Of a DNA stretch of 64,000 nt, positions 9,199 through 64,000 are shown in pieces (position 1 is the stretch's first letter; every line of letters begins with the position of its first letter). Origin of the DNA: Macrostomum lignano (Eukaryota). The notes under the pieces were generated by a model. That model ran no database searches. It was not told the origin of the DNA and worked only from the letters and a program-made list of their open reading frames with translations. The position numbers and the translations under genes were made by a program. The DNA lies in assembly GCA_002269645.1 (NCBI GenBank), contig NIVC01001413.1:229673-293672 (forward strand), in the 5' to 3' direction.

Positions 9199-17128
<7,930 letters not shown>

Positions 17129-24502: not shown

Positions 24503-24885
24503 GCAAAAGCTGATTAAATTGATTCATAAAAACCTGTCTATGGAAGTCATATAAAATTGCCTTTTCCTAGCTTTTTTTAGTGGGGTATTCAGCAGGTACA
24601 AAAGTTTAGAATAAATGCATATGCAAGGGGAGGGTTATGTTGTGCGCGAATTAGAACATTTTTTAATTCCTTCTGACGGATCTGAACTTCTGAAGCTTAT
24701 TAGCTTTGCTATGAGAGTGTTACTATCCAGAGAAATGTCTGATGTGTAAAATTCGATGATTTCCTAGACAGAGCATTTACTTGCGCCCTGCAGTTTTACA
24801 AAAGAATTTCAAATTATATCGAGAATTGTATAGTCTGTTGCAGACATTGCTTATTCTCACAGCCGGGGGGGGGGTCGCCCACCAA

Positions 24886-33419: not shown

Positions 33420-34180
33420 CAGTCAGATAAGAGAGTAGAGAGAAAGGAGAAGAGAGGAGAGATGATAGAAAACCAAGAAAAGACAGTAGATATGAGAAAG
33501 GAGAGATTAAAGATGACAGAGGGGAGTGAAGAGAGGAGTGAGGCAGAAATGAAAAGGGAGAGAGAAGAGAAGAGAGAATGTAGAGAGAAGAAAAAAGAGG
33601 AAAGAGGAAAGACGAGAGGAGAGAGGAGAGAGAAAAGAAAAAGAAGAGAGGAGAGATGAGACAGGAGACAAGAGACATAGAGAGGAAAGAGGAAAGACGA
33701 GAGAAAAAAGAAAAGGGTTGAGAGAATATAGATATGTGACATGAGAGCAGAGAGAAAAAATAGAGTACAGGATGGAGGAGAGAATAGATAAGATATAAAA
33801 GATGACAGAAAAAAACAATAGGAGATAGGAGAGACGAGGCAAGAAGAGAGAAAAGAGAGAAACAACAGGAGAAGGGAGAGAGAAGAGAGATGAGAGAGCA
33901 GAGGGAGAAATACGAGTACAAGAGAAGAGAAGAGAGAAGAGGAGAGAAAAGAGGAAGGAGAAAAGGGAATAGATGGGATAGAGGAGAGGAAAGGGGAATA
34001 AGAGAGAAGAGAGAAGACTGGAGGGAGTAAGAGCTGATAGACAAGAGAGAAGAGATAAGAGAGTAGAGATGAGGGGGAGAGGAAAGAGAAGCGAGATGAG
34101 AGGGCAGAGGAGAGAAAAGAGGAAAGAGAAAAGGGGAGAGATGAGATAGGAGAGGGGATAAAATAGGAGAGAGAGAGAGC

Positions 34181-34252
<72 letters not shown>

Positions 34253-34450
34253 GAGAGAGAGATAGAGAGAGGAAGAGAGTAAAGATGAAGGAAGAGAGAA
34301 GAGATGAAAGAGTAGAGAGGAGAAAGTTGTGAGGAGAAAGAAGAGAGTAGATATGAGATCACAGAAAGGAGAGATGAGAGATGATAGATGAATGATGATA
34401 AATAAGAGATGAGAGACCAAAGAGTAGAGAGGAGACATGAGAGACTCTCA
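33420..34450. repeat. Purine-rich (AG/GA) low-complexity tract
   Basis: Almost only A/G on the + strand; pure (GA)n core near 34170-34270. Confidence 0.95.
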
Positions 34451-35916
34451 GTCTGAACAATAGCAGCAGAGAAATGGTATTTGAAAGGTTTTATAAAGGA
34501 TTTGGAAGATGGGATTCGGATCATGGGATTCAGCTGATGGAGTTCAGGGAATGGAATTCTGGTGATGGGAGTTTTTCCCCTTTCTCCTCCAACAGAGGAG
34601 TTGGCCTTGTAGTTTTATATTTACAAGTTTTTACAATTAGTATTTATCAATTAGCTTGTAAATTGCTTAGATGACCTCTATGTTTTACAAAAACATGCAA
34701 AAGCAGAGACAATGCATTATGTAGTTTATTTTGGAAAAAAAGTATAAGATGTCTATATTTTCTATGTTAACTGTAGCGGATTAACACTTATTAACAATTA
34801 TCAATTAACTTTCAGTAAACCTAACAAAATAAGAGTAAAAAAGTGAAGATTTTTTGCTTTAACACTAATGCTTTTGCTATTAATGGAAGTTAAAGATTTT
34901 CATTAATGGTGCCCAACACTGAAAGGTCTTTAGGTTAGTTTAATAAAATAATAAATATATTTATTTTCTAATGGAATAGGCCTATCAATGTTTTTAAAAG
35001 GCATAGCAAAGTGATAGCATTGGCCAAAACAAAAAACCAAGAATAAGTTGGTGGATAAGCTATTAAGGGCATTATGATATGGGTAATTTGGTAGATAGAT
35101 AGTTGAGGATGCTATGTTGTGGCCCTTGTTTGAAAAGTGCTTTTGAGGTTGGCTTTCTTAAAAGTTGATGAGTATACTATAATAATTAGTAAAAATGTCT
35201 TTAGAGGGGTATTATATATAAAATATCATGTTTTTATGCATATAGTTTTTGATTAGAGTTGAATTGGATTTTTCATATTATTCTACTGTTAGTAGACTGT
35301 TGAGAACTTTAACCTCCTACAGTATTTTCAACTAACACATTTTAAAAAGAGCTAGAAGCAGTGTTATATACTAAATTGTTTTCTTTTTGCAAATAGTGGT
35401 ACCATTGCTAAAAAATCAAGAAAAATTACTTGAATTTTTTATAAATATGAATTAGAAAGTATGTAATTGTATACAATATATGAAGCTATAAATATATGTT
35501 GATTTAAAAGGGTATTAGACTACTTATTTAGTAGTATTGTGCTTCTTCCTTGCTTTAAAAAAACAAACCAGAATAACTCTGAATGCTATTTAATCATTTG
35601 ATTTAATAATTGCTACTATTTTAATAGCAATAGCAGACATCAAGTATTTCAAATTTTAAGTGATTAATCAAATTTAATCAATTGAAATAATTTCTGTGCC
35701 TCTCTTCAGCAGTAGAATAATTCAGGGGAGGATGAAATAATTAATCGAAAAAAGCAAACTTACTTCAATTTAGGCCCTTTTTTATTGAAATGTTTGTTAT
35801 AATGGCATTGATATTATCAACTTTGGCATGTTTTCACCCCATTGCATTTGCTTTCTACCATAGACAACAGTAAAAAATAGGACACGGATTAAACATATTA
35901 CACATGAAGCAACATA

Positions 35917-36517: not shown

Positions 36518-38045
36518 TTAGTCGAAATAGATCACTACCTTGTTGTTGACTCCGTCAGCTTCTATTCTCATTCTCTTGCTTTTCGGTTCCGGAACAGAAA
36601 TTCCAACCTTCTCTAGCGCGACGACAGCCGTTTCCTTAGCGTCAGGAGCCACCAGAGGCGTCTCTGGACAGTCCGCAACCAGAGTCACAGCCAGAGCCGT
36701 TTCCTTGGCCTCAGGAGCCACCAGAGACGTCTCTGGACCGTCAGCAACCAGAGGCACAACCAGAGACGTTTTCTTGGCGTCAGGAGCCACTAGGAGCGAC
36801 TCTGGACCGTCCGCAGCCAGATCCACAGCCAGAGCAGCTTCACTGACATCTGAACTCTTGCCCGTCGAATTCCCGGCAGTGATGGCACTAGTACGACTTT
36901 GCACGCCAACAGACATGCCAATGTAGCGCTCAACGGCGCTGCTACTAAGACCTGATACGAAAGTTTTTTCAATAAAATAAAAAATCTTTAATATAAGATA
37001 ATATTTTAATATAAGAAAATAAAAAATTTATGACCTGTGATCCGACAAATGTTCGCGCGTTCAATTCCAGCGTCGTGTAGTCGGGTAGCAGTTGTCTTCC
37101 GCAAGCTTTGATTGGTGTACCTTCCAGAATCTTCCGGCGCCCATCGGCGTTTTCGTGAACCATCCACCAGACTTTCCCGGCGCCCAGAACCGATTGGGCG
37201 ACAGAAAGAGCACTTGGTCACAGTCCTCAGGTCGCTTTGCGATGTAAGCCTTGTAGACACACACGATACATCGCCCATGGCTATCAGAATGGAATGCACG
37301 GACGACCTTTGGATCCCGTCGCAACTCCTTCAGTCCGCCCTGGTGCGTCTTCGTCACAGAATTTTTCACGTAATTTAGACACTCTCTCCCATCGACGCAA
37401 TCCAGTCGAATCTGCTTCTCAAATTGCAAATCTCTGAGCTCGGAACCACCACGCAAAGCAAAATGCTTGCCAACAAGCCACACAATCGCATTGGACATAG
37501 CTTGAGGTGTAGACTCTCCAAGAAGTTCGGAGCCCCGAGGCGGTCCTCGACAGAACACGGAATGGCTTCAGCTCGACGGAGTCCGGCACATTTTCCATCC
37601 CTCGTTGACAGCTTCATTGAAGCATCCAATGCTCTTCGACTCTCGCTAAATTCCGGTTCCTTCCAGAAACTCCAATCCTTCTTTAATGTGTTTTGAAAGT
37701 AGTACTGGGTCATAGAAAACAGGTCTTTTAACGTCGATGCGGTGTATCGTTCACCTTCGTGGGTTCTCACTTCAAATACAAAAAACTTGAGCAGGTAGTT
37801 CAGATCGCCTTTGCTCATTTCTTCGCTACTCTTAATCACCATTAGGCCAGTTGTAGTTCCATCAGCCCAAGCAGTCTTCTTAGCCTCGTGCCATGCAGTA
37901 AAGACGCTCATAGCCCAATCGGCCTTTTTGTGACATTTGTGATCATCTTGAAGCGTTGGACTCCTCCGTTCTTCTCTTCGTAGAAGTCGAGCAGCTCCTC
38001 AGAAATAAAAAACTCCGGTGGGTTTTGAGAAGCTCTATTTTCCAT
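36518..38045 (-). mobile_element. Degenerate Crypton-type tyrosine recombinase (DUF3504/ZMYM-like) coding region
   Basis: Frames pieced together read: WAMSVFTAW..LNYLLKFFVFEVRTHEGERYTASTL..EFSESRRALDASMK..LVGKHFALRGGSELRDL..KTHQGGL..RCIVCVY..YTNQSLRKTTATRLHDAGIERANICRITG(H)..SSAVERY. At least 3 frameshifts and an HxxR to QxxR change. GC-rich hairpin-like motif GGCCTCGGCTGCGCCTCGGCC near 38220. Confidence 0.85.
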
Positions 38046-44660: not shown

Positions 44661-45601
44661 ATGCTCGCGTCAATCGCATTTCGGTTTTCTGCTGGCAGCC
44701 GCCTCTGCGTGGCTTGCCGACTGTTGTCAACTTCGCCGTGCGAGTCTCAGATCCGAGGTCAAGTTTTAGACGAAGCCCTCGCTCGGGTGCCAGATCTCGG
44801 CTGGACTCGGAGCTGCGTGGAAGCCGGGGCTCGAACCCTGGACCTGCCAGAGACAATGGCGGATTTGGCGGCGCCGCGTGGCGGAGCGGATTTGGCCCTG
44901 TACTTTATTGACAGCTGCAATGATAAGCTGGAGGCGCAGCTCAAACTCAGATCAAGTGGCTTAAGCTCTGCGGGTGAAATTTCTTTAGAGCTGGTGGGGT
45001 GCGTTGGTTGCGTATTATACTTTATGCTCTTATATTTGCTCTCAGCCATTCACTCAGCCATTCACTCTCACAGCCATTCACTCTCACAGCCATTCACTCT
45101 CACAGCCATTCACTCTCACAGCCATTCACTCTCACAGCCATTCACTCTCACAGCCATTCACTCTCACAGCCATTCACTCTCCAATGCAGTTTCGCCTGTC
45201 GCGAGCGGCTCAGCATGATCCGACCGCTGCTACCCTACTGGCCAGCTGGCATCGCCACTCTCACCGGATCGCCCAGTCTGGCCCTGGAATCTGCGGCCAG
45301 ACTTCAAAGACTTGCCGACGACATCTGCCACTACGCCGGGGACAGATCCACCGACCTCGGGTGGTACGCTCGGCGACTGGCTGTTGGGGCGGTGTACGCA
45401 TCGACTGAAGCCTTCATGCTGCAGGATGTCAGCGAGGATCTGGTCAACACTTGGGCCTTTTTGGATCGGAGGATTAACAAGGATCTAGCCGCTATTAGGA
45501 CTGCACGGCAAGTGGCTGGCGGCGCCTTTGATGTGATGAGTGTGGGAGGTTTAACTGCTGCGTCTATATGTCCGTCCGTCCTGTCTGTCTTAATGTCTTA
45601 A
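44661..45601 (+). CDS. COQ9: Ubiquinone biosynthesis protein COQ9, mitochondrial, about 249 aa
   Basis: Exons 44661-44998 and 45190-45601 in phase. Arg/Ser-rich transit-like N-terminus; motifs LDEALARVPDLGW, LADDICHYAGDRSTDLGWYARR, VYASTEAFMLQD.SED..NTWAFLDRRI. The extreme C-terminus runs into a microsatellite and may instead be spliced. Confidence 0.9.
45044..45180. repeat. 16-bp repeat (CAGCCATTCACTCTCA) in the COQ9 intron
   Basis: About 8 copies ending a few bases before the acceptor. Confidence 0.95.
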
Positions 45602-45880: not shown

Positions 45881-45983
45881 GTCTGTCTGTCTATCTCTCT
45901 GTCTGTCTGTCTTAATTTCTTAATGTCTTAGTGTCTGTCTGTCTGTCTGTCTGTTTGTGTCTGTCTGTCTGTCTGTCTGTTTG

Positions 45984-46018
<35 letters not shown>

Positions 46019-46035
46019 GTCTGTCTGTCTGTCTA

Positions 46036-46110
<75 letters not shown>

Positions 46111-46135
46111 TTCTGTGTGTCTGTCTGTCTATCTA

Positions 46136-46178
<43 letters not shown>

Positions 46179-46289
46179 TAATGTCTTAATGTCTTAGTGC
46201 CTTAATGTATTAATGCCTTAGTGCCTTCATGTCTTTGTGTCTGTCTGTCTATCTCTCTGTCTGTCTGTCTTAATTTCTTAATGTCTTAG

Positions 46290-46320
<31 letters not shown>

Positions 46321-46370
46321 GTCTGTCTGTCTTCTCTCTGTCTGTCTGTCTTAATTTCTTAATGTCTTAG

Positions 46371-46401
<31 letters not shown>

Positions 46402-46452
46402 GTCTGTCTGTCTGTCTGTCTGTTTGTGTCTGTCTGTCTGTCTGTCTGTCTG

Positions 46453-46490
<38 letters not shown>

Positions 46491-46493
46491 GTG

Positions 46494-46550
<57 letters not shown>

Positions 46551-46745
46551 ATCTGTCTGTCTGTCTGTGTCTCTGTCTTAGTGTCTTAGTGTCTGTCTGT
46601 CTATCTGTTTGTCTGTCTGTCTGTCTATCTGTTTGTCTGTCTGTCTGTCTATCTGTCTGTCTGTCTGTGTCTCTGTCTTAGTGTCTTAGTGTCTGTCTAT
46701 CTATCTGTCTGTCTGTTTTAATGTATTAGTGTCTGCCTGTCTGTC
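45605..46745. repeat. (TGTC)n compound microsatellite with interspersed TTAATGTCTTAGTG motifs
   Basis: Seen directly. Confidence 0.97.
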
Positions 46746-47348
46746 TGCGTTATTACATATTCTATGCGTTTTCTTCCATTTGTCATCTGTGTGACGGTCA
46801 GCTCCTAGAGCTTGGCTTTATTATTTTAAAGTCGTCCCGATGCTGTTAGTCTAAGAGTGTCCACTGTCCAGCATTCACTGAGAGAAGCTGTCGACGAATT
46901 ATAAATAATTGCCAGCTATTATTTTTAATTGGTGCGTAGGTTGCAGGTGCTTATGTTTAAAAAAAACTGCATGCTTTTCAAAGAATCTTCAGCAGAGGAT
47001 GGCCAATCTGTAAATTATGAAGAAATTTCTTTAATTCGCAGTAGAAATATTTCGACCATTCGACATTCGCTGCAGGCGGAACTCAGTCAGAGTCAAAGCA
47101 AAATGATGATTTTCAGGTGCCTCAGAAACAGCTTTACGGTTAAAATGAAGTTGTTAGCTATGGATTTTCCTTAAAAATTGCTGCTGAGTAGATTGGGAAA
47201 ATATTTATTCAGCCGCTATTAACTCCGAAATTGGCCGTCCACTGTCTGTGAAATTTAATCTCATTGATGAAAATTGCGAAGCTCTGACAATAGACAGCTG
47301 CTTGCAATCTAAATGCACAGATTTAAAGCAAGGAATAAGTGGTACGGG

Positions 47349-47349
47349 C

Positions 47350-47385
<36 letters not shown>

Positions 47386-47505
47386 GGACACACAGACAGA
47401 CAGACAGATAGACAGACAGACAGACAGATAGACAGACAGACAGACGGACACACAGACAGACAGACAGATAGACAGACAGACAGACGGACAGACAGATAGA
47501 CAGAC

Positions 47506-47536
<31 letters not shown>

Positions 47537-47545
47537 TAGACAGAC

Positions 47546-47596
<51 letters not shown>

Positions 47597-47639
47597 TAGA
47601 CAGACAGATAGACAGACAGACAGACAGACAGACACAGAC

Positions 47640-47732
<93 letters not shown>

Positions 47733-48899: not shown

Positions 48900-48975
48900 C
48901 TGATTGGATTCAGAAAATCCGTTATAGGTAGGGGCGGATGGGGATGCTGAGCCGTCAGAAATTGTCTATAAATGC
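48900..48975 (+). promoter_or_regulatory. Core promoter of the neuropeptide gene
   Basis: TATAAAT at 48967-48973, about 90 bp before the ATG; upstream ATTGG (reverse CCAAT) and GGGGCGG motifs. Confidence 0.6.
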
Positions 48976-49059: not shown

Positions 49060-49410
49060 ATGAACTCCAAACTGATCATTGCTCTGGCCTCCGCCGTCCT
49101 GCTGTCCATTGTGTCCACTGATCTCGCCGCTCCGACTGCTGTTGGGTCGGGCAAGTCGTCCAGCGGTGTTGAGGATTACCTTGACTTCCTTTACCACTAC
49201 ATGCACTCGGTCAATCGGCCCAGGTTTGGCAAGCGTTCCGTACCGAACTCGGCCATGATTGGTTTCAACTCGCTGCCCCAGATTCGCTACTTCTGGTACG
49301 TTGTGTCCCGTCGTCCGTCGCGCACGATCACTGAGGCCGAGGCTAACTGGTACCTGGCCCAGGTCACCCGCTACATGCAGCTGGTGGTTAACAGGCCGCG
49401 ATACGGCTAA
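49060..49410 (+). CDS. Neuropeptide Y/F-family precursor, 116 aa, intronless, two peptide units
   Basis: Signal peptide MNSKLIIALASAVLLSIVSTDLA. Unit 1 ends YLDFLYHYMHSVNRPRF-GKR (Tyr at -10 and -17, as in NPF/NPY). Unit 2 ends YLAQVTRYMQLVVNRPRY-G-stop. Confidence 0.9.
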   Translation: MNSKLIIALASAVLLSIVSTDLAAPTAVGSGKSSSGVEDYLDFLYHYMHSVNRPRFGKRSVPNSAMIGFNSLPQIRYFWYVVSRRPSRTITEAEANWYLAQVTRYMQLVVNRPRYG

Positions 49411-49432: not shown

Positions 49433-49721
49433 AATAAAGCTAGTCTGGCGGTTCTGGCTGAACAGTCTACTAACTGAACTAAATAAGCTGTTGTGTGCTT
49501 GTGTGTGTGTGAGAACTGAACTCTCTTGTGCTTTTTTTCGAGTTCCCCACTGGTTAATATTTGTAGCTCAGCTGTCTTTACCTCTGACTGGACTGAATTG
49601 CAGGCTGCCAACATGCTGGGCTTGGCTCGGCGCTAGTCATCTGGCGCACACTGATGGATCAGCAAACAGCTCTTATTCGAAACCGAACATCAATGCGATT
49701 AACAACTATGTCTGAAATAAA
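49433..49721 (+). terminator. Candidate polyadenylation signals of the neuropeptide gene
   Basis: AATAAA at 49433-49438 and 49716-49721. Confidence 0.5.
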
Positions 49722-53055: not shown

Positions 53056-56000
53056 TCAGTTGGCTTCGCATTCAACAATCTTGCACTTGGCGGCGGTCGT
53101 AGCGCTGTTGCAGCTGCACTGCCGGCATCTGGGCTGCCTCAGGTGACTGGCGATCTCGTTGGTTACCAGCGACTTCGCCAACTGGTTGTCGCCAGAGGAG
53201 CCGCTCTCGTAGAATTTGTCGAGTCGCCACACGCTGCCCTTGGCTGAAATGAAACGGTGATAGATTTTCTAAAGATACAGTAGGTTTTATTCTTTCGAAT
53301 GAATACTTCGAATGGCCTACTGACTTATCTTGGTAAGTAGTATTCTGTCATAGTTAGACAAAAAATTAATATACTCATAATTTCTTACCTTTGTTGTCAG
53401 CATCCAAGGCTAGTTCGGTCGTGCACTCTGGTTCGAATTGTCGATCAGCTCGATCGGTCATCTGGACAGCTCGGTCGCCGGTCTTGTAGTACTTCGCTTC
53501 GCCATAGCCGATCACATCGTCATCCTCAGCAGCATCCTTGATGGCCGTCTTGCTGATGGTGTGCACAAAGATCTGGTCCTTGACGCTGCGCTGGGCCTTG
53601 GCAAAGACTGAGTTGTAGCTCCAGGCTAGGCCGGTGCATCTGTAAATCGAAAGTTAAGGGAAAAGTTTCCCAGTTGCGAGTACATGCACCTTCCTCTTAA
53701 ACTGAGAGGTCTAGTCTATTGTCCATTTAGAGTCGCACAGTGTGACTTGTGACTTACGGTGTGCAGGTGAGGACAAACAGGTGCTTCTGCGCGAGTCGTT
53801 CCCACTCGTATTGCTCCGGCAAGTCGGCAACCGCCTGCAGAGCGTTGATCGGTGAGGCTGAAGAAGTCCTCGACAGGCGAAGGTTGTCCAGAGCGGCCTC
53901 CAATTCAGAGTAGGATCCAAAAAGGTGCTCGTCGCTCACTGGCAGAGCGTACAGAGCGTCGCTGTACTTGGCGATACCGAATTTAACCGACTTCAGATTT
54001 CCGTCCGTTGATTTTAGCTGATCTGAAATTGTTTGATTTATATAATTTATACATGTGGCAAATTTTTAAAGCTATAAGTTTACTTGCTAAAATGCCAAGT
54101 AAAATCGGTGCTCACCGATCTTCTGAGCCAGCTCCTTGATTCTTTCGGCTGGAACGGCAGCTTCAGCACCGCAGGCGTTATCCTCAACCAGGAACACAAC
54201 CTGCATTCGCTCCTTTAGAGAGGCCTTATCCGACACTTTGCCGCCCTTGACGATGGGTCCCTCGCTGTCAACCTGGCAGGCGACGCACTTGCTTGGCACT
54301 CGGACGCTGATGCCCTCGGCCTTGCAACGAGCCGCGTACTGGCGAGTGGCAGCGCACGCGTCACTATCCTGGCGCTCCTGCCGACGGCAAATAGTCCAGT
54401 AGGGTCGGGGATCGACGGTCTCAAAGCAGTCCAACATTGGCGACTGCCTGCTGCCGAACCAGTTGTAGCAGTCACCGCTGCTGTCACGGTCTCCAGTCTG
54501 CTCTTCGGTGATCTCTGCGGCTGAGTCGCTGACAGCTTCGACCTCGCACTGGCCGGCTGTCCAGAAGTTCATGTGCCGGCTGGCCCGGCCCTCGCGGATG
54601 TCGTTCACCCTGCGGCCATCGTTGCTGCCAGCCAGGCCGAGAACGCGACCCTGATAGAGCGGATGGACGCTGATCAGACAGGAGTCGGCGGCGCGGCTGC
54701 AGCGAACCACCAACGTATTGGGCAGCTTGCCATGGAATCGGACGGTGACGAGGTCTCCTTCGCGCCTGGCGTCAACAGACTTGTCATCGGAGGACTTCTT
54801 CTCCAGCGGCAGGCTCTCAGTTTTGTCATTCAGTTTCACCGTTCCATTGCGTTCAATGCTCAAGCTGAACATCCCGAAACGAATCCGGAGGCTTCCGCGA
54901 ACCTGACGCTCTGGTTGAGCAGAGTCCCTGCGGTACTCTTGCACGATAGAGAAGGCGCTGCACTCGAAGTCGCGGGCAATCAGATAGGAGCACGGTCGCT
55001 TGTGACTGAGTGCGACACCGTCAAAGGTGATCAGATGGTTATCACCAGACAGGATGGCGGTGCGGTGGCGGATTGCAAGCAGCCGGAAAGCCGGATTCCA
55101 GTCGCCAAGAGCCAGCTTAATTAGGGCGGCCATCTTGTCGGACGCTTTGGGCAGACCGCGACGCGTCAGTTTATTAAGAACGCGTCTCAATACAATCTGG
55201 GGTGCACTGTACGATGACCAGCGTGGCAGTTTGCTGTAAATAATTTCGCCCTCCACAGCAGCGTAGGGAGTCTCGCTTCTTAGGCATGCATCAATGCACT
55301 CGGGGCGCCAAACAGTGTATCTGATCTCGTCTTTAAGACGCAACATGCCTTGGCGGATGTCACCATTGAGGATCAGTTGAATGGTCTCAGCCAGGTAACG
55401 CCACTTACTGAGGCTCTCTTCCGAGAAAACGTAGCTCAGCAGCTCGCTAGTCTCGCTAAGGGCTTCACGTTCGACGGGTGTGGCTCCAGTATCGTACCAG
55501 ACGCGCAGCTCGAGCATCAGATTATTGCACAGGTTCCTGATGATCTGAATGTCAGCAATGTGGTTCATTCCGAGAGGCAGCAGGTCGTCAACGGCCAGAG
55601 GCTTGGCCCCAGCAACAGTTGCGGCGAGCATTGTACGCATCGGGGCCCAGATCTTTGCTACGGCGTTTTTGATGGCGTTTGCCCATGGAGCCATGCTATT
55701 CAGGTACTCCTCTGCTTGTTCGGAGCTCCATGTGCCTTGGATGTCGGTCAGGTCAGAAAGCCAGCTCTTAAGGATGTCGATTATCTCAATCGCCTTATCG
55801 CTACAGCTTTTAATGATGTCCTTCACCTGGTCCAGGACAGCTACTAGTCTGTCAATGAAATCCTGGATTGAGATTTTGTTGCACAAGTTGGCGGCAAAAT
55901 CCAGCGCCTGCTGAACGCACTGGGCAATCCACTGAGGAATTTTCGACTGGTCGAGAGCCTCCATCCATCCGCTCAGCACCTCTGACGCTACTGAAAGCCA

Positions 56001-59000
56001 TCCCTGTGCGTATTGAGTAGCAGATTGGCAAGCCTCGAGGGCGCTGCGGATGTAAAGATCGTTGTTCCTCATTGCGCGCTTCACGTAGCGGGACAGTTTA
56101 TCGATGTCGTTGGAGGCCAAATTTCGGATCTCCTCGGCAATCCAGTCGGCGTCCACGTTCGAGGAGGTGCCACCAAGCAGCGGGTTGAGACCGCTAAACT
56201 CGCTAACAGCCGAGATAGCGTCGGTCCAAGAGCTCGAAAGGCTGCGCTGCATGCTTCTCACGGCAGAATTCTCCTGGCTCGGATGCCTCCAGTTGACACG
56301 GAAGCTCATCTTGCTGTCATCCATCTGTCGATAAGCTAGGCCATAGAAGCCCAGGCGAGCAGGCACAGAAGCGGCATCAAAGAGATCGGGCTTCTGACCC
56401 ACAGTCATCTCACCTATGAAAACAGTCGCGATGAGTTCTTTGCTGTTGACGCTGATCTTAGATCTCAGGAGAACCTTCTCTGGGGTGTATTTGGGCAGTC
56501 TTAGGTCGGAGTCATGATGGAAGCTTCCGCGACCCTGATCCAGCTTAAGTGTGATCTTCTTCGTTGGTGCGCTAATCATAAACTTAAGACGGGATGCGCT
56601 CTCGTCCTTGGATGAAGCGAATGCGACCAGTTTGAAAAAGTTCTTGCCATCTGACTTCAGGCTGAGAGACACGCCGTCTTTGCACTGAAAGTTTTTGGTG
56701 GTTTATTGTTATATTTAGGTCATTTACTTTTATGCATACTTTTTATAACCTTTAAAGAGTTATATTGCTAAAATTAACTCACCGAGACAGTCAGTTCGCG
56801 CCAAGGTTGGAGCACGAACTTGATATTTTTGTCCATGGAACCCAGCTTCAACTTAAGGGTTCCGTCAATCTTGGACTGTGTGTTCCAGTTTTTGTTGTAG
56901 TTAACTTGCGATCGAACTGACAAAATGATTTTCGAGTCTTCAGAGCCGCTTACTTCCATATTAATCCGGTGATCACCCTGGCTATCACGGCTGTAGGCAT
57001 ATTTCGCAGCCAGTACGTCGATTTCGCCATTCTTATGTTTTAGCTGTACAGTGTAGCCACCGTCATTGTGCTCGAGACGAGCCTCCAGCTTGATAGGATT
57101 GCGCAGAAAAGGAGCCTTGCACTCCAGCTCGAACTCACTATCAAGCGCCTTAGCGGCCAGATGGATGGTCAACTCGATCGCTTTTTCAGTGGACACGTCA
57201 GCATCCCAGGCGATGGTGTTCTTGATCTTGAGCTTGTTGTCAGTTACCTCTGGCTGTACGTCCATGCGGATTTTCCTTGTTGGTAGGATGATCTCCAAAG
57301 TGTATGTGCGAGCTTCAGAGGCAGGAGATTTGGACTTGTAGAGAACAGTAACTCCATGAGACTGTCGCTTGTCGAGGTAGAGCTCCATAGTAACCAGACT
57401 TTCGCTAGCTGTTTCCCTAAACTCTTTGCCGATGACAAACTGACGACGCGGGCACTCTGTCTCCAACTTGAAGTCAGGAAGCACGGCATTCTCTTTCGCT
57501 GGGTTGTAGCTCAACTTCAGAGAATACTTCTGAAGGTTGTCGCCAAACTTGTCGAGAGAGAAGCTCAGTTTAGCCGGCCTGTCCTCGCTAGCGGACTCAA
57601 ACTTCATGTTCCACTCCATCTTGCCAGTGATTTGAACTTCAACCTTCTTCACCCCATAACCACTTTGTCCGTCAAGGCGGGCATCGGTTGTGCTTAGATC
57701 TTCGCCGTTGATCTTGATGGTGTCCTTGTAGACAAGAGTGTAGGCATCAGAGTCGCTTTCCATCTTACTTTCCAGACGCGCCTCCAGAGACCTGATCTGC
57801 CAGCTGGACAGCAAATCGAACTTAGATGTCAGGCTAGTCTCCAGGTCAAGATTGAGTCTTGGCTTGAAGCGGTACTTACGAGCAGTCAGCACCCACACAA
57901 TCTGCTCGGTGTCTTCGCCCAGACCGTACTGAACTTTCATCTGGCGGCCTTCAGTTAGCTGCTGAACTTCAGCCTTGAGGCTGACTGGCTGATCGATTCC
58001 AGTGCCGGGCAGCGCCAGCTGAACAATCAGCTCCTTCTTGTCCGAGTCATCGTCTCCAGACAGGAACTTGGGAAACTGAACCTTTAGATCGATCTTATCC
58101 TTAAGCTTCAGTTCAAACTTTGGCTCTCTAAAAGACGCACTGAATTGGTTTCCAATCTTACAGGTAGCCTCGACACTGGGCATATCCATATCAACGTCGA
58201 CTTTCATTACCCAGATTTTTTCATCGCTAGTACTGACCAGGTCGCTCTCGATCTTGAAAGCCTGGGGTGCGTTTCTGAAGTCGTGTTCGTAGTTCATGCT
58301 CTTCACACCGATGCAAGGAGCCTCAAATACAATGCTAAGCTTGCGGACTGAAACCCTAGCACCGATGGTTAGCTTCATCGGGTAGCTGGTAGTTGGCAAC
58401 TGGATCTTGTAGTTCGGCCAAAGAGTTAGCTCGGTGTTCTCAGCGTTGGTCTCGTGATTGATGGTCAGATCGGCTGACGCGTCCGTTAGCTCGTAGTCGA
58501 CTCGCAGTAAGTTCGGACGAGAGCTCTTGCCGTAGTTGATGGCAATCTGTTTTTGTTGCATTTTGACCTCGATGACTTTAGTCTCACCATCTGATTCAAT
58601 CTCGATCTTGGCACGAGCATCTTGCCAGTTCTGGTATTTACCTTCCCACTTCACCTGAAGCGTGTTGGCCTCATCGGAGTCGGTCGTCATGGTTACTTGA
58701 ATTTCGCCATCAGAGCCAGAGGTTACAGCGAACTCGCGTCCGAAAGCACTGACTTTGCCAGATTTAATTTTTGCGTCTTCATACTCCCAGCTGGCAGTTA
58801 TTGGTTCGCGCACTTGGGGCAGTTGCACAGACGATTTCCATTCAAAGTTATTCTCCGGTTTCACTGCGCGAACAAAGTAGGCGTCAATGCCGGAGCCCTT
58901 GATCTGCATTCCGCGGTCGATATTCGCCACTGGGATCGAGGAGTCGCTTCGCGGTGAGTTGAGCCAGAACAGCTTGGCCTTGAGCAGCTCTTCGTCGCGA

Positions 59001-62000
59001 TCAGCCATGCTAAGTGAGGCGTTAAGCGTCTTGTCAGAACCGTAGTTGTAGCTTGCCTGCAGCTTGACACGCGCCATGTCCCCTAAGAAAAATCGAAGGT
59101 CGCTATGCAGCAGGACTTCGCCCTTGATACCATCAGCAGCGTCAGTCTGAGTGTAGGCACAGTTGATTAGTTTGTGAGTACTTCCATTCCAACGGAAGGC
59201 GGCCAAAATCTGCTTCTTGTATTGGCTGTGCTCAAATCGGAAAGCAACCATCTGTAGCTTCGAAGAGGCTAGATCCATGTCCAGGCCAAGCTGGAACCTT
59301 GTCGGCTGAAGAGGGTAAGTCATGTTGGCTTGTCCAACGATCAAGTCGCGAGCCACTTCGTTCGTGCAGAAGGAGCACTTGACACGGAAGTTGACCTTCC
59401 TAGTGCCGCAAGACAGGTCCTCAACTTCATAGGTGGCAGCAGCCTCTTCGTCGTTGTACTCCACACCAGCAAAAGCGTTCTTGCTGTCCAGCTCCATGCG
59501 GGCACCGTACTTAACTTCCCAGCTTCCGTAGTTCTTTGCCTTTACTTTGGCCTCTGCCTTGAATGGCCAATAGTTAATAGCGCTGGCCAAAAGCAGCATT
59601 GGCTCCTTTGTGGTGGTATGGTCGGGCGAGCTGACTGATGCTACGAACTCAAATTCCATCGTAGGCTTCTTCTTCAGCATTAGCTCGTATTCTAGCTTCT
59701 TGTAGCTTATCTGACCCTCAAAGCCTTCGATCTCGGCTTTTCCTGTCAGACCCAGAAGGAAGCTGTAGCCAGGCGTACTGCGGCTGAATGTTGCTGTTCC
59801 ACTCTTCTTGATTTGCATCTGCTTTGTGAGGCTAACAATCTTGGCGATGGCGTCAAACTTGATTGCCTCAGGAACGTCAGTCTCCAACCTGATCTTGATG
59901 CCAGCCTCCTGAAGAAGCGGATGCGCCGTCTTCAGATCGACCATGAAGATGTTTGATTCGATTTTCAGCATGGCGCCCACGATCTTGGTGTTGTCGATCT
60001 CAATCTCCGACTCGAACTGAGCGCCGTTGTCCTGGCTGATTTCAGATTTTGCCTTCATCGACTTGAGGGGCAAAACTCCAAAGTCGCCTTCGAGCTTCAG
60101 TTCGGCTGCCTTTCGAGTTGGGGCTGCATTGAGTTCAAGACGCAGTTTAGTTTCCCGGATGGTAAGAGCAGCGACCAAGTAGTTCTCGGAATCTGCACGA
60201 CCACCAGTGACGTTCAGTTTGGAGCTCAATGGCACAGCACTGATTTGACCCTCCAAGTTGGCTAGGGCCTCGTACTTAGGAGATCTCGTCGAATAATCCA
60301 GATAACGAATCTTCATGTCCATCTTGACGTCATGCCATCTCCAAGAGTCCATAGAAGCGATCTTCAAACTGCCACTCTCACCATCATAGCTAGCATTCGA
60401 CTTTATAGACTGATCTTTGCAATAGACTTCGACCTTGATTCCCTTGCCAGAAGCGCTGTCTTTAGTTCTGGCGGCGCTCACACCGTATTTAACTTCGCTA
60501 TCAGACCAGCCCTTCACGCGAAGCAGGTGTTTCCAGATCTCGCCCTCGCGGCTTTCTAGCTTGATGACGTTTTGAAGAACGATTTCCTGAGTAGCTGCTG
60601 GTCCAGTCATTTTGCTTTCGTGTTCGAATCGCATGCCCCACAGCAGGTCGTTGAGCAGTTGTAGGCTCTTTTCGATCCTGTATCTCCCAGCTACCAGACG
60701 GACCTGGTAAGCCATGAGTTCAGCAATGTCGGCAAGGGACTGTTGATCGATACTAACGCGGTTCTCTACGTCGTAAGTCTTCTCCCGGGTCTCCAGAGTC
60801 ATCTTGTGCTTCAGCTCGTGATCTCTCTCTGGGCCTACCTGCTTCAGACGGAGGCTATGGATGCTGCTAAGAACCTTTGCGTCGTTCTTCTTGACAATGA
60901 CGTCGGCGTTCACGACACCTTCCTCCGGTCGGGTCAGGCCGCTCTTGATTTCCATTTTGTTATCCTGCCAGTCCTGCCAGAAAAACTCGTGCCTGATTGC
61001 GTCAACGCCTTCCGCCTTCTGCAGCTTGCTCTGCAGATGGAAGTAGACGTAATCGTTGTACTCGGCCTTGGCAATTTGCTCGCTCAGCATCTTCTCAGTG
61101 TTCAGGACATGCTTAACCTGGATGGCGTAACTTTTGCTTCCAAGTTGAGCTTTAGCCTTCATCTGGACCGCCTGCTTTCCAAGGGACCAACGACCCCATG
61201 GAAGGTGCTGCAGCTCGGCTTGGTACTGGGCAGTTTGTCCCTGTGATATTGATAGGATTTTTCCAGAGTTAAATCCAACTGTATATTTTAAAGCCAAGGT
61301 TCCGATTAGTAAAAACCCACAGATTTGCTTACCTCAAAGCTAATTCCATAGCTCAGCGCATATTTGTACTGCTTTCCAAGTCCATCAGTAGCGTTGGTAA
61401 ACTGACTCATCTCGATCTTCACCCGATCCACTTTGGCTGTCACAGACCTGCCCTCCTTCGAGTAGGTGACCTCTCCAGAGCCGGAAATTTCAGTCTTCTG
61501 GCTTTGCTCGATCTTCTTGACGCCGAATCGGGCATCGAAGTCGAATGGAGACTTAGCACTGTCGCTGCCGTACTGCAGCTTGTGGCTGATGGTGGCGCTG
61601 TACTGCTTTCCGTCAGCTTCCGATCGGCTGGTCAACTTTGAGTGCAAATTGTGCATGAAATTCTTGCCCATAGGGTTCTGCAGGGCAAAGTCGTACAGGA
61701 AAACGGTGGAAGCGTCGTCGGCGCTGCCTTCGACAGTCTGGCGGTACTGAACCCGGTAGCGCACGGCGGTCGTGTCGCCCTTCTGAGTCTTGTACTCGGA
61801 GCCCATCTGCCAGAAGAAGTTAGACTCCTGCAGCTTAAGATCGTACTCAAGGTTAAGCTCGTTTTTCGTGTGCATCTTAGCCTGCAGCTTAGTGGTAGCG
61901 ATTGGCAGCAGCACCGGAGTCAGGCCAGAGAACTTGTGCTCCAGGGTCACTTGCACCTTCTGGTCGATCTTATCTTTCGGGTGAACCTCTCCCTGAATGC

Positions 62001-64000
62001 TGTTAAAAATAAATACGAATTCTTTAAATTCGAAGTGGCAGGCACTGATATGAAGGAATAAGAGCTAATACTAATGATTACTCATACACTTACATAACTC
62101 CCTTCTCTGAGTCAGGTCGAACTGAGCCAGTAGCCAAATACTCGACAGAGCCAATCTGAGCCTTTGCGTTCACCTGGTGTCCAGATTCGGACTTGGTGAA
62201 GTTTGAATCAATGACAATCGGGAAGATCGGGTTTTGCAGCTCGAGTTTGTAGCTGATGTTGTCTCTACGGCTGACCGACTGGATGTTGAACTTCAGCAGT
62301 CGCTCCTTTGACTTTCGATCACCAATCAATAGCTGCAGTTGCTTTTCGCTGCGCTGACTCTTCCACTTGTAGTTCACCTCGAAGGCACTAAAGTCGTCAC
62401 TCTTTTCCAGGAACAGCTGGTAGCTGCTTGGGCACTGGAGGATCTTGCACGGGCTTGTCTGGCAGTTTGGAAGGCTCTCAGTCTTGAAGCAGATCTTGTG
62501 TCCGCCAAGCTTTTTGGCCAGACCCTCTACGCATCTTTCGCTTTGGACGCTAGCTTGCTGCGGTGTCAGTGCCTTCTCAACGTGCTGCTTGCCGGCGGTG
62601 TGCTGGAAAAACTTCACCTCAGTCTTGACCTCAGCAACGCTCTGCCTCTTGTTCAGTGGCTCGATCTTGACCAACAGCTGGCGATCGGAACTGTCATCAA
62701 GATTTTTTTTCAGGTTGACCCGCACTCCGGTGCTGGACAGGAAGCTGGTGCTAGACTGGATTCCGGCGCGTTCGAAGATAGCGTCCACGGCAACTGTGCG
62801 CAGCATCTGGATGGCGGCCGTCGGTTGCACCTGCACCGTGGCCTCTATGCCGGTGCTCTGGCTGAAGCTCATTTCAGAACGCAGGTTGGTGACGTAGTGA
62901 GACTCTTGCTTCACCAGAATTGGCAGGCCTGCAGTGGTAGGGATAGACAACGTGCTCTCCATGAGAGTTCCAGCCGCGGCGCCGGGTTTCCCGCTGACCA
63001 TAGACGGCATGAGGCTTCCAGCCTGTCCGCTGGCAATCAGAGCAGGCAGGGACTCGATGATTCCGCCGCTGAGATCGGTGTGCGACAGCTCGACCCCGTA
63101 GCGTCGAACGAACAGGTCAATTCGCGGCTTGATTCGCGTCTGGGTAAGACGAGGATGGCTCGGCTGGCTCAGCAATCAGGCTGTACGTCTGCTCGATCAG
63201 GAGCCCCTGCATGCGCAGGCCGATCTCCATAAGATTGATGGACTGGCCCTGGCTCGGCATGTTCACCGTCAGGTTGAGGCCGTTGCGCGGGATGGCGGAC
63301 TGGGCGGAGAACTGGGCACCTCGGCCTGGGCTCCGGCCTCAGGGCAGGACTGTAGTACTGGCCTTTAAGGACGTTGGAGCGGCGGCTTAGCTTCTTCAGC
63401 TCTGTGGCGGTCTTGGCGCTCAGTAGAATCGGGGACATGATGCGAGCGTCCTGGCCCTTCAGGTTTTTTAGGTGAGTGTAGACAAACATCTGAACCTGAC
63501 GGTCGCCTCGTCCTATCGAGGAGTTGACGAATATAATCGCGCAGCATTGAGGGGTTGCTGAAACCGTGGCGGGCCAGAGCTTGGAAAGCAGCGATTCGAA
63601 CTTCGGCGTCTTGGCTCTCGTCGAGCAGCAGATTGCTCAGTTGATGTTTATCAGTTGTGGAGAAGTTAGAAAATCGGCGCAGCGAGTGCAGAGCAAAGGC
63701 TCGGTAGACGATCTGCAGACGCTGATTGTTGGCGCACTGGACAAGGGAGTTGACGCCTCCTCGCATCCGACCCATGTTTCCGATAGCCAGCAGAGCCACG
63801 AAAGCGTTGTCCGAATCGGCACCGTTGAACTTGGCGCACGCCGGTCCTAGCGAGTCGGCGAAATAGTCGATAACGGCCTTCACGCGGGAGTCGGACTCGC
63901 AGTTCGGCAGCTCTTGGCAGATCTTGTGCACAACAGCGGACAAGGCGAGGGGTTCGTCACGGTTCACGCCAGTGATGAGTGCTTGGTCCTGGTCGCGAAG
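53056..64000 (-). CDS. Apolipophorin/apoB-like large lipid transfer protein (vitellogenin superfamily), 5'-truncated by the window edge
   Basis: Exons 62094->64000 (frameshifted near 63130-63520), 61333-61999, 56783-61240, 54116-56684, 53758-54022, 53389-53639, 53056-53243. LLT-module motifs LLAIGNMG, DAEVRIAAFQAL, QMFVYTHLKNL, PTTAGLPI; vWD domain HLITFDG..CSYLIARDF..GRVLGLAGSNDG; C8-like CFETVDPRPYWTIC; Cys-rich C-terminus CRQCSC..CKIVEC-stop. Confidence 0.93.

What the first reader, a model, noticed from the sequence alone, without database searches (positions are those of the whole stretch)
49060..49410. One intronless precursor encoding two tandem NPY/F-type peptides, one RPRFamide and one RPRYamide
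NPY/NPF precursors normally yield one amidated peptide followed by an unrelated C-terminal peptide, and usually have an intron in the Arg codon of the RxRF/Y motif. Here unit 1 (about 33 aa, Tyr at -10/-17, RPRF-GKR) is followed by a second NPY-like unit in place of the C-terminal peptide (Tyr at -11/-18, RPRY-G at the very end, so amidation needs no cleavage). Its RY-amide end is the vertebrate NPY/PP type. A possible N-terminal cut at SRR would give about 30 aa. There is no intron, and TATA and poly(A) signals are intact. This may be a two-ligand NPY/F system co-releasing peptides for different receptors. Whether it is already described I cannot check.
Basis: partly seen in the sequence, partly recalled or inferred. 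Interest (0 to 1): 0.75.

Follow-up and report, generated by a model that had tools for sequence, protein, structure and literature searches.

The report
Two-unit flatworm neuropeptide F precursor
This is a real, intact, intron-free gene for a neuropeptide-Y/F-type hormone precursor carrying two hormone-like units (one ending RPRF-amide, one RPRY-amide); the layout departs from the textbook one but turns out to be normal for its only detectable relatives, a cluster of multi-unit genes in the flatworm Macrostomum lignano.

Summary
Window 49060-49410 (+) is one continuous 116-codon ORF. It holds a signal peptide, an NPF unit ending RPRF-GKR, a 26-aa spacer ending RR, and a second NPY-like unit ending RPRY-G-stop. 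A TATA box lies 93 nt upstream and AATAAA 23 nt downstream.

Pfam's NPY/PP model hits both units. A search of 1.84 billion proteins found only two relatives, both Macrostomum lignano NPF precursors (E=4e-13 and 8e-8).

Those relatives change the interpretation. M. lignano has a three-gene cluster of multi-unit NPF precursors with no intron in the Arg codon. One of them is an unannotated gene with one RF-amide and one RPRY-amide unit. RY-amide ends are also known in planarian NPY genes and in C. elegans FLP-34, which likewise puts RYa and RFa peptides on one precursor.

Unit 1 is canonical. Unit 2 is divergent: one extra residue before RPRY, weaker amphipathicity and a poor N-terminal cleavage site (RR-Pro). 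It still shows strong in-frame codon bias.

Verdict: a new, divergent member of a lineage-specific multi-unit, intronless variant of the NPY/NPF family. I found no published description of that variant. Interest is moderate, and the two-receptor idea is untested.

The parts
48967..48973 (+). TATA box (TATAAAT), 93 nt upstream of the ATG
   Evidence: Read directly and by pattern scan. M. lignano relatives have TATAAA 43-125 nt upstream of their annotated gene starts, and their transcript-based models begin about 40 nt after it.
49060..49410 (+). Complete single-exon CDS of the prepro-NPF-like precursor (116 aa + TAA)
   Evidence: Pfam PF00159 hit. phmmer E=4e-13 to M. lignano NPF precursor. In-frame codon log-likelihood ratio +58.7 against -69 and -74 in the other frames; GC3 0.75 against 0.45 GC in the flanks.
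49060..49128 (+). Signal peptide (aa 1-23, MNSKLIIALASAVLLSIVSTDLA); cleavage site inferred, give or take one residue
   Evidence: Sequence features read directly. Aligns with the signal peptides of the M. lignano precursors. AF2 helix at residues 3-22 in a low-confidence model. No SignalP was run.
49129..49227 (+). Unit 1: predicted 33-aa NPF, APTAVGSGKSSSGVEDYLDFLYHYMHSVNRPRF-NH2 (mono 3685.77 Da)
   Evidence: Tyr at -9/-16 and an RPRF end. 50-53% identical to M. lignano first units, z about 16. Strongly amphipathic helix, muH 0.41, p=0.0025. Mass.
49228..49236 (+). Gly57 (amide donor) + Lys58-Arg59 (dibasic convertase site)
   Evidence: Read directly. GKR follows every RPRF/RPRY unit and is invariant in the alignment with the M. 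lignano precursors.
49237..49314 (+). Spacer, aa 60-85 (SVPNSAMIGFNSLPQIRYFWYVVS + RR); possibly the relic of a middle NPF unit
   Evidence: MAFFT places it opposite the middle unit of the M. lignano precursors in three separate alignments. Pairwise tests are not significant: protein p 0.045-0.9, DNA p about 0.5. It keeps in-frame codon bias, log-likelihood ratio +13.7.
49315..49404 (+). Unit 2: NPY-like peptide, PSRTITEAEANWYLAQVTRYMQLVVNRPRY-NH2 (30 aa, 3623.88 Da) if cut at RR; 56 aa (6692.46 Da) if not
   Evidence: Best Pfam stretch, aa 83-116 on model positions 4-36. Similar to unit 1, z=8, and to M. lignano units, z 5-7.5. One extra residue between the Tyr and RPRY. muH 0.29, p=0.145. 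Codon log-likelihood ratio +17.3 and GC3 0.87.
49405..49410 (+). Gly116 (amide donor) directly followed by the TAA stop
   Evidence: Read directly. A C-terminal Gly is a substrate for peptidylglycine alpha-amidating monooxygenase without prior endoproteolysis (established enzymology; inference here).
49433..49438 (+). Poly(A) signal AATAAA, 23 nt after the stop

Best explanation
This is a functional, single-exon gene for a secreted neuropeptide precursor of the NPY/NPF family. It belongs to a lineage-specific multi-unit, intron-less variant of that family, whose only detectable relatives are in the macrostomid flatworm Macrostomum lignano.

Inferred mechanism. The protein enters the ER and its signal peptide is removed at about residue 23. 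In secretory granules a PC2-type convertase cuts after K58-R59, a carboxypeptidase removes KR, and PAM converts Gly57 into the amide. The product is a canonical 33-aa NPF (...NRPRF-NH2). The C-terminal half already ends in Gly116, so it can be amidated without any cleavage, giving an ...NRPRY-NH2 peptide. That peptide is 30-31 aa if R84-R85 is used and 56 aa if not. Both peptides would be packaged and released together and act on NPY/NPF-type GPCRs.

Shown: the ORF, the motifs, homology, coding-type codon bias in all segments, and the multi-unit, Arg-codon-intron-free state of the relatives.

Inferred: expression, processing, amidation, receptor action, and whether unit 2 is bioactive.
For: The ORF and motifs are as described. 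Pfam PF00159 reaches its gathering score with two stretches, and each unit hits it alone.

The only hits among 1.84e9 proteins are two M. lignano proteins that UniProt names Neuropeptide F and Neuropeptide Y. They carry two or three tandem ...SRPRF-GKR units.

In the genomic DNA these genes are continuous ORFs across every RPRF codon. The one annotated 'intron' is exactly one 99-bp repeat unit.

A third, unannotated M. lignano gene encodes ...RF-GKR plus ...RPRY-GKR.

M. lignano genes A and B are under purifying selection between homeologous copies, pN/pS about 0.05-0.2.

In the unit alignment Y, Y, R-P-R and G are invariant.

In the window gene all three segments show in-frame coding bias, with log-likelihood ratios +27.7, +13.7 and +17.3 and GC3 0.69-0.87, against non-coding-like flanks.

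TATA and AATAAA are in place. The AF2 model puts helices at 35-51 and 92-110, each ending just before N-RPR-F/Y, though confidence is low.

Precedent for RYa + RFa from one NPY-like precursor, both peptides active: C. elegans FLP-34 (PMC6751662).
Against: There is no transcript, peptide or ortholog evidence for this particular gene. It is absent from the 15-billion-protein collection and from metagenome contigs, so conservation of unit 2 could not be tested.

Unit 2 deviates from the family in three ways: one extra residue between the conserved Tyr pair and RPRY, amphipathicity not above shuffles, and Pro at P1' of the RR site.

The analogous heterotypic M. lignano gene C looks unconstrained. 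It shows 7 nonsynonymous and 0 synonymous differences between two copies, its third copy is broken, and it is not annotated.

The conserved NPY/NPF Arg-codon intron is missing. The source organism was not identified.
Confidence: 0.72

Rival explanations
1. The gene is real but yields only one ligand. Unit 1 is the active NPF. The C-terminal 57 residues (spacer + unit 2) are a decaying relic of extra units and serve only as a CPON-like flanking peptide.
For: Unit 2 has a register-shifting extra residue, weak amphipathicity (muH 0.29, p=0.145, against 0.41, p=0.0025, for unit 1) and no clean N-terminal cleavage site. Alignment position suggests the spacer may be a dead unit. M. lignano gene C, the RFa + RYa paralog, evolves without constraint and is broken in one copy.
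Against: Unit 2 keeps the whole C-terminal pharmacophore, N-R-P-R-Y-Gly, both Tyr residues seven apart, and the stop codon exactly after Gly. It is the best-scoring Pfam stretch. Its codon bias is the strongest in the gene: GC3 0.87 and log-likelihood ratio +17.3 in frame only. A free-drifting tail would be unlikely to keep RPRYG immediately before the stop.
Confidence: 0.2
2. It is a silent processed retrocopy or pseudogene. An NPF mRNA was reverse-transcribed into a new site, which would explain the missing intron, and is not expressed.
For: It is intronless, whereas the family's conserved intron is otherwise nearly universal. There is no synteny with the M. lignano NPF cluster: the window flanks are COQ9 and a vitellogenin-like gene, the M. 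lignano flank is CwfJ. It is not in any protein collection.
Against: The ORF is intact. It has its own TATA box at the expected distance and AATAAA. Codon bias is maintained. No poly(A) tract or target-site duplication is evident in the flanks read. The expressed, selected M. lignano relatives also have no intron in the Arg codon, so this is a family trait and not a mark of a dead copy. An ancient retroposition that founded the whole family is not excluded.
Confidence: 0.05
3. It belongs to the sNPF/PrRP-type lineage, not the long NPY/NPF lineage. Multi-copy precursors and absence of the Arg-codon intron are sNPF-like traits.
For: sNPF precursors typically give several peptides and lack the NPY-type intron (PMC7314547).
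Against: The units are about 30 aa, not 8-12. They have the NPY Tyr20/Tyr27-equivalent pair and RPRF/Y, not RLRF. They hit the Pfam NPY/PP model over positions 4-36.
Confidence: 0.03

Closest known systems
Macrostomum lignano NPF precursors Mlig009822 (PAA66726/PAA79626/PAA75754; UniProt A0A267EZ17 'Neuropeptide F') and Mlig007142/Mlig003006 (PAA79627/PAA66725/PAA75755; 'Neuropeptide Y')
   Same: They are the only sequence relatives found (E=4e-13 and 8e-8). Both have a signal peptide followed by tandem units of about 30 aa with Y-x6-Y-x5-RPRF-G and a dibasic site. Both have no intron in the Arg codon, and both have a TATA-type promoter.
   Different: The M. lignano units are homotypic (all SRPRF-GKR, two or three per gene) and followed by a short tail. 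The window gene has two strongly diverged units (35% identity): the second ends RPRY-G-stop with one extra residue, and a 26-aa non-NPF spacer sits where M. lignano has its middle unit. Overall identity is only 34-38%, synonymous sites are saturated and there is no synteny.
Unannotated M. lignano gene 'C' (NIVC01000624.1; L002:6055-6366, L004:13788-14099)
   Same: A two-unit precursor with a first unit ending in RF-GKR and a second ending in RPRY-GKR, so an RFamide and an RYamide on one precursor. Single exon, lying inside the NPF cluster.
   Different: Its unit 1 has lost RPRF (SLSRF or SLYRF). Its RPRY unit keeps canonical spacing and a GKR + tail. It is a recent duplicate of gene A (z=16-20), not an ortholog of the window gene: window unit 2 is no closer to it than to the RF units, z=5.1. 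It appears unconstrained, 7 nonsynonymous to 0 synonymous differences with one copy broken.
C. elegans FLP-34 / NPFP-1 precursor
   Same: One NPY/NPF-like precursor gives two RxR[F/Y]amide peptides, FLP-34-1 (RYamide) and FLP-34-2 (RFamide). Both activate the NPY/NPF receptor ortholog NPR-11 at nanomolar EC50 (PMC6751662, PMC11004728).
   Different: The paper's peptide alignment could not be viewed. PMC7314547 reports the conserved intron in a nematode NPY/NPF gene. No detectable sequence homology to the window precursor in the searches run here.
Canonical NPY/NPF genes (vertebrate NPY/PYY/PP; flatworm NPF of Moniezia, Schistosoma, Arthurdendyus; Schmidtea npy-1 to npy-11)
   Same: A 30-40 aa amidated peptide with an RPRF or RxRY end, the Tyr pair, an amphipathic helix, and a GKR processing site directly after the signal-peptide-proximal peptide. 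Both F- and Y-ending forms occur in planarians (PMC2953531).
   Different: Canonical genes encode one NPY/NPF peptide plus an unrelated C-flanking peptide. They carry a phase-2 intron in the Arg codon of RF/RY (PMC2953531, PMC7314547). The window gene has two units and no intron.

Membership tests
NPY/NPF (long neuropeptide F/Y) precursor family | N-terminal signal peptide immediately followed by the NPY/NPF peptide | tested here: met
   MNSK + 14-residue hydrophobic core + STDLA, then unit 1. It aligns with the signal peptides of the M. lignano precursors. No dedicated signal-peptide predictor was available.
NPY/NPF (long neuropeptide F/Y) precursor family | C-terminal R-x-R-[F/Y] followed by Gly (amidation) and a basic cleavage site or the precursor end | tested here: met
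   RPRF-G-KR at aa 53-59 and RPRY-G-stop at aa 112-116.
NPY/NPF (long neuropeptide F/Y) precursor family | Peptide length about 30-40 aa with two conserved Tyr, equivalent to NPY Tyr20 and Tyr27 (at -16 and -9 from the C-terminal residue), on an amphipathic helix | tested here: met
   Met for unit 1: 33 aa, Tyr at -9/-16, muH 0.41, p=0.0025. Only partly met for unit 2: Tyr pair seven apart but at -10/-17 because of one extra residue, and muH 0.29, p=0.145.
NPY/NPF (long neuropeptide F/Y) precursor family | Significant match to the curated family profile (Pfam PF00159 Hormone_3) | tested here: met
   28.8 bits against a gathering score of 28.7, E=1.3e-6, two stretches. This is borderline: each unit alone scores about 16 bits. 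The M. lignano relatives carry precomputed PF00159 hits.
NPY/NPF (long neuropeptide F/Y) precursor family | Conserved phase-2 intron inside the Arg codon of the terminal RF/RY. This is a supporting synapomorphy used in orthology arguments, not part of the peptide definition. | tested here: not met
   The ORF is continuous through both Arg codons, and so are all M. lignano family members. I read this as lineage-specific intron loss. It is why I file the gene as a variant and not as a canonical member.
NPY/NPF (long neuropeptide F/Y) precursor family | A single NPY/NPF peptide followed by an unrelated C-flanking peptide (CPON) | tested here: not met
   Two NPY-like units in the window gene. Two or three units in the M. 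lignano relatives.
NPY/NPF (long neuropeptide F/Y) precursor family | The mature amidated peptide activates an NPY/NPF-type GPCR | not testable with these tools
   This needs synthetic peptides and receptor assays. A protocol precedent is in PMC4862687.
Macrostomid-type multi-unit NPF precursors (M. lignano genes A, B and C) | At least two tandem NPF-like units in one single-exon ORF, with significant whole-precursor similarity | tested here: met
   phmmer E=4e-13 and 8e-8. Collinear alignment of signal peptide, unit 1, GKR and the last unit.
Macrostomid-type multi-unit NPF precursors (M. lignano genes A, B and C) | Location in the CwfJ-linked NPF gene cluster (synteny) | tested here: not met
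   No similarity between the 64-kb window and about 60 kb of the three M. lignano cluster copies, apart from the 43-nt NPF motif and microsatellites. The window neighbours are COQ9 and a vitellogenin-like gene.
sNPF / PrRP-type precursors | Short peptides of about 8-12 aa (sNPF), or an intron in the N-terminal or central part of the peptide (PrRP-type) | tested here: not met
   Units are about 30 aa and there is no intron at all. Criteria from PMC7314547.

The most novel reading that the evidence does not exclude
The two units are distinct ligands co-released from one precursor. In this reading the canonical RPRF-amide unit and the register-shifted RPRY-amide unit have been partitioned onto different NPY/NPF-receptor paralogs. 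The macrostomid multi-unit, intron-free NPF genes would descend from a single retroposed NPF copy that then amplified its peptide unit. That would be a long-NPF lineage converging on the multi-copy organisation otherwise typical of sNPF precursors.
Probability: 0.15. Interest if true: 0.6.

Novelty: new variant of a known kind. Interest (0 to 1): 0.4.

Why it matters
NPY/NPF is one of the best-conserved bilaterian neuropeptide systems. Its 'one peptide + CPON + Arg-codon intron' gene plan is used as an orthology criterion, for example to separate NPY/NPF from PrRP/sNPF (PMC7314547). A flatworm lineage in which long NPF peptides are encoded as two or three tandem units in genes without that intron shows the criterion is not universal. 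It also gives a natural system for asking how multi-copy neuropeptide precursors arise and diverge into RFamide and RYamide ligands.

In flatworms NPY-family signalling controls sexual maturation (planarian NPY-8/NPYR-1; PMC2953531, PMC4862687), so extra ligands are of physiological interest in Macrostomum-type model worms.

The practical gain is modest. It amounts to a new gene, an unannotated M. lignano paralog, and a corrected gene model.

Tried and rejected
(1) Word-indexed homology search with the precursor found nothing. An exact look-up of the 116-aa protein found it is not on record. A metagenome scan found no relative.

(2) Organism identification failed. The HAL exon gave only 57-69% hits scattered over molluscs, trematodes and vertebrates, and only short entries were listed. 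The COQ9 N-terminus gave no hit, which in hindsight was a poor use of the last search. There are no tRNA or Rfam hits. blastn and tblastx against about 60 kb of M. lignano found only microsatellites and the NPF motif. The window is probably not the M. lignano Mlig_3_7 assembly, but I cannot name the species.

(3) 'The spacer is a decayed middle NPF unit.' This is suggested by three MAFFT alignments, but pairwise shuffle tests are not significant: protein p=0.045-0.9, DNA p about 0.5. I keep it only as a hypothesis.

(4) 'The window gene is the ortholog of the M. lignano RFa + RYa gene C.' Rejected. Gene C is a recent duplicate of gene A, and window unit 2 is no closer to C's RY unit than to the RF units.

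(5) A recent relationship inferred from shared synonymous codons in the 43-nt match was rejected: 19 of 43 identical codons against 14.5 expected.

(6) A PDB sequence search gave only a chance hit to a glucanase, E=1.2. I did not run Foldseek because the AF2 model is low confidence (pLDDT 49.6) and single helices give meaningless matches.

(7) The bacterial-type promoter/terminator scan is irrelevant to a eukaryotic gene.

(8) Literature searches for a description of multi-unit long-NPF precursors in Macrostomum or other flatworms found none in the held library. McVeigh et al. 2009 (PMC2749192) and Koziol et al. 2016 could not be read, so prior description cannot be excluded.

Full report
**1. 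What is in the sequence**

Window 49060-49410 (+) is a single uninterrupted ORF of 116 codons ending in TAA:

MNSKLIIALASAVLLSIVSTDLA | APTAVGSGKSSSGVEDYLDFLYHYMHSVNRPRF-G-KR | SVPNSAMIGFNSLPQIRYFWYVVS-RR | PSRTITEAEANWYLAQVTRYMQLVVNRPRY-G-stop

- The first 23 residues look like a signal peptide: a basic n-region, a 14-residue hydrophobic core and a small-residue c-region.
- Unit 1 has Tyr at -9 and -16 from the terminal Phe. This is the spacing of Tyr27 and Tyr20 in NPY.
- Unit 2 has the same Tyr pair seven residues apart, but one residue further from the end (-10 and -17). The cause is one extra residue in 'YMQLVVN' compared with 'YMHSVN'.
- A TATA box (TATAAAT, 48967-48973) lies 93 nt upstream of the ATG. 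AATAAA (49433-49438) lies 23 nt after the stop.

**2. Is it more than chance?**

- RPR[FY]G is expected 0.12 times in the six-frame translation of the window. It occurs twice, both times in this ORF, and none of 200 shuffles produced two in one ORF.
- Pfam PF00159 (pancreatic hormone/NPY) reaches its gathering score with two stretches: 28.8 bits against 28.7, E=1.3e-6. Each unit alone scores about 16 bits.
- The two units are similar to each other at z=8. A faint DNA trace of the duplication remains, CCRCTACATGCA, p=0.02.
- All three parts of the ORF (signal + unit 1, spacer, unit 2) show coding-type codon usage in frame 0 only. The log-likelihood ratios are +27.7, +13.7 and +17.3, and they are negative in the other frames. 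GC3 is 0.69-0.87, while the flanks have 0.44-0.46 GC and score as non-coding.

The whole ORF, unit 2 included, behaves like maintained coding sequence.

**3. Relatives**

The word-indexed search found nothing. The exhaustive phmmer search of 1.84 billion representative proteins found exactly two hits, E=4.1e-13 and 8e-8. Both are from the flatworm Macrostomum lignano:
- Mlig009822, which UniProt automatically names 'Neuropeptide F';
- Mlig007142/Mlig003006, which UniProt automatically names 'Neuropeptide Y'.

They are themselves multi-unit precursors:
- Gene A has three units: ...YFHSVSRPRF-GKR, ...YLHSVSRPRF-GKR and ...YLHSMSRPRF-GKR.
- Gene B has two units in its annotated model and three in the genome.

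In the genomic DNA both are continuous ORFs through every RPRF codon. The single annotated 'intron' of gene B is exactly one 99-bp repeat unit that the model skips. The genes lie about 8 kb apart, downstream of a CwfJ gene, on three homeologous contigs.

**4. A third, unannotated gene in the M. lignano cluster**

A six-frame motif scan of those contigs turned up a third gene between A and B:

MARLPTLILVLVLIFGTLDPPSCLA EVPEAPTQFNSADEVDEYSQDLNKYFYWLSLSRF-GKR SKTKDFRSSEEATKYVISLLQYVYWASRPRY-GKR QYRINRR

It is also a two-unit precursor with one RFamide and one RPRYamide.
- Its units are recent paralogs of units 1 and 2 of gene A, z=16 and z=19.8.
- It is intact on two contigs and broken on the third.
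- Between homeologous copies, genes A and B show clear purifying selection: pS 0.03-0.06 and pN 0.003-0.009.
- Gene C shows 7 nonsynonymous and 0 synonymous differences. It is either drifting or changing fast.

Window unit 2 is no closer to the RY unit of gene C (z=5.1) than to the RF units (z=5.3-7.5). The F-to-Y change (TTY to TAY) therefore probably arose independently.

**5. Relation of the window to M. lignano**

- Overall precursor identity is 34-38%.
- Synonymous codons at conserved residues are no more alike than codon bias predicts: 19 of 43 identical against 14.5 expected.
- There is no synteny and no shared interspersed repeat between the window and about 60 kb of the M. lignano cluster.
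- The window's neighbours are a COQ9 gene upstream and a very large vitellogenin/apolipophorin-like gene downstream on the minus strand.
- Neither the precursor nor the COQ9 N-terminus is in the protein collection that contains the M. lignano proteome.

I conclude the window comes from a flatworm with a macrostomid-type NPF family, and probably not from the M. lignano Mlig_3_7 assembly. I could not name the species.

**6. How it most likely works**

The following is inferred from established prohormone processing.
- Signal peptidase cuts near residue 23.
- A PC2-type convertase cuts after K58-R59, carboxypeptidase E trims the basic residues, and PAM uses Gly57 to amidate Phe56. The product is a canonical 33-aa NPF of 3685.77 Da.
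- The remaining C-terminal fragment already ends in Gly116, so PAM can amidate Tyr115 with no further cleavage.
- Its N-terminus is uncertain. R84-R85 is followed by Pro86, and Pro at P1' generally disfavours convertase cleavage. This is general knowledge, not tested here. The product may therefore be 30-31 aa (3623.88 or 3779.98 Da) or the full 56 aa (6692.46 Da).
- All forms share the NRPRY-amide end, which in this family is the receptor-binding end.

The AF2 model is of low confidence (pLDDT 49.6). It places helices at residues 35-51 and 92-110, each stopping just before N-RPR-F/Y. Unit 1 is as amphipathic as the M. lignano units: muH 0.41, p=0.0025. Unit 2 is not significantly amphipathic: muH 0.29, p=0.145.

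I put 0.72 on 'real, expressed NPF-family precursor of the multi-unit variant'. Within that, I put roughly even odds on unit 2 being a bioactive second ligand.

**7. The spacer**

In three independent MAFFT alignments the 26-aa spacer falls opposite the middle unit of the M. lignano precursors. The pattern is ...NSLPQ..YFWYVVSR-----R against ...TSLNQ..YLHSVSRPRFGKR or ...SLLQYVYWASRPRYGKR. This suggests a three-unit ancestor whose middle unit lost its RPRF-GK. Pairwise shuffle tests do not support it: protein p=0.045-0.9, DNA p about 0.5. It remains a hypothesis.

**8. Comparison with what is known**

Canonical NPY/NPF genes encode one peptide followed by an unrelated C-flanking peptide, and they carry a phase-2 intron in the Arg codon of RF/RY. 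Planarian npy-1 to -6 and npy-8 to -11 share this intron (PMC2953531). [quoted passage not shown] The window gene and its M. lignano relatives break both rules.

- RY-amide ends are not a vertebrate speciality. Planarian NPY-5, -7, -9 and -10 end in Tyr.
- One precursor giving an RYamide and an RFamide NPY-like peptide is documented for C. elegans FLP-34. Both of its peptides activate the same receptor, NPR-11, with EC50 19 nM and 0.7 nM (PMC6751662; PMC11004728).

On the other side, flatworm NPY receptors can be very selective. Planarian NPYR-1 responds to NPY-8 (EC50 36.7 nM) but not to the closely related NPY-1 (PMC4862687). Two receptors for two units is therefore possible, but untested.

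**9. Novelty**

The gene itself is in no searched collection. Its family, multi-unit long-NPF precursors without the Arg-codon intron, is present in GenBank and UniProt only as automatic annotations. I found no description of it in the searchable literature. Two key subscription papers, McVeigh 2009 and Koziol 2016, could not be read.

I class it as a new variant of a known kind. It is moderately interesting for neuropeptide evolution because it removes the universality of two criteria used to define NPY/NPF orthology, and it offers a model for the divergence of tandem units. It is not a categorically new system.

Noticed in passing
L002:6055-6366 and L004:13788-14099 (M. lignano NIVC01000624.1 and NIVC01001537.1); broken copy at about L003:6555-6870: An unannotated third NPF-family gene sits between the two annotated M. 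lignano NPF genes. It encodes a 103-aa precursor with ...SL[S/Y]RF-GKR and ...SRPRY-GKR units. It is intact in two homeologous copies and carries a frameshift and stops in the third. The two intact copies differ by 7 nonsynonymous and 0 synonymous changes.
   Followed up: yes
L002:10001-10426 and L004:17377-17802: The annotated 108-aa model of Mlig007142 (two NPF units) treats one 99-bp repeat unit as an intron. The genomic sequence is one continuous ORF with three units, as in the 141-aa Mlig003006 model. This is probably a gene-model or transcript-assembly collapse artefact.
   Followed up: partly
window 49222-49229 and 49388-49393: The Arg55 codon of unit 1 reads AG|GTTTGG, a weak donor-like site exactly at the ancestral phase-2 intron position. 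AACAG|G occurs in the first Arg codon of unit 2's RPRY. Splicing the two would stay in frame and give ...NRPRPRYG. The M. lignano genes have CGA or CGC at this position, so this is probably coincidence.
   Followed up: no
window 54087-63967 (-): A very large lipid-transfer (vitellogenin/apolipophorin-like) gene with huge exons, including ORFs of 861 and 1507 aa. Pfam finds Vitellogenin_N, the open beta-sheet domain, VWD and C8. It runs off the window end.
   Followed up: partly
window 4584-7296, 12478-14418, 18350-19132, 24777-26293, 33415-34524, 45931-47641: Long minisatellite and microsatellite arrays give spurious ORFs of hundreds of codons in several frames. These include (GACA)n-type tetranucleotide arrays that also occur in the M. 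lignano contigs (L002:16563-16977).
   Followed up: no
window 44661-45601 (+): A COQ9 gene (Pfam PF08511, E=6e-27). Its coding sequence appears to be interrupted around 44960-45190 by an intron filled with a short tandem repeat.
   Followed up: no
window 37061-37911 (-): Two overlapping ORFs in different frames carry QRICH1 and DUF3504 domains, a pairing I recall from Crypton-derived genes (not tested here). This is likely a frameshifted transposon-derived gene or pseudogene.
   Followed up: no
window 19326-20039 (-) and 7355-7894 (+): [quoted passage not shown] The latter's best hits, at 65-69% identity, are to molluscs and trematodes.
   Followed up: partly
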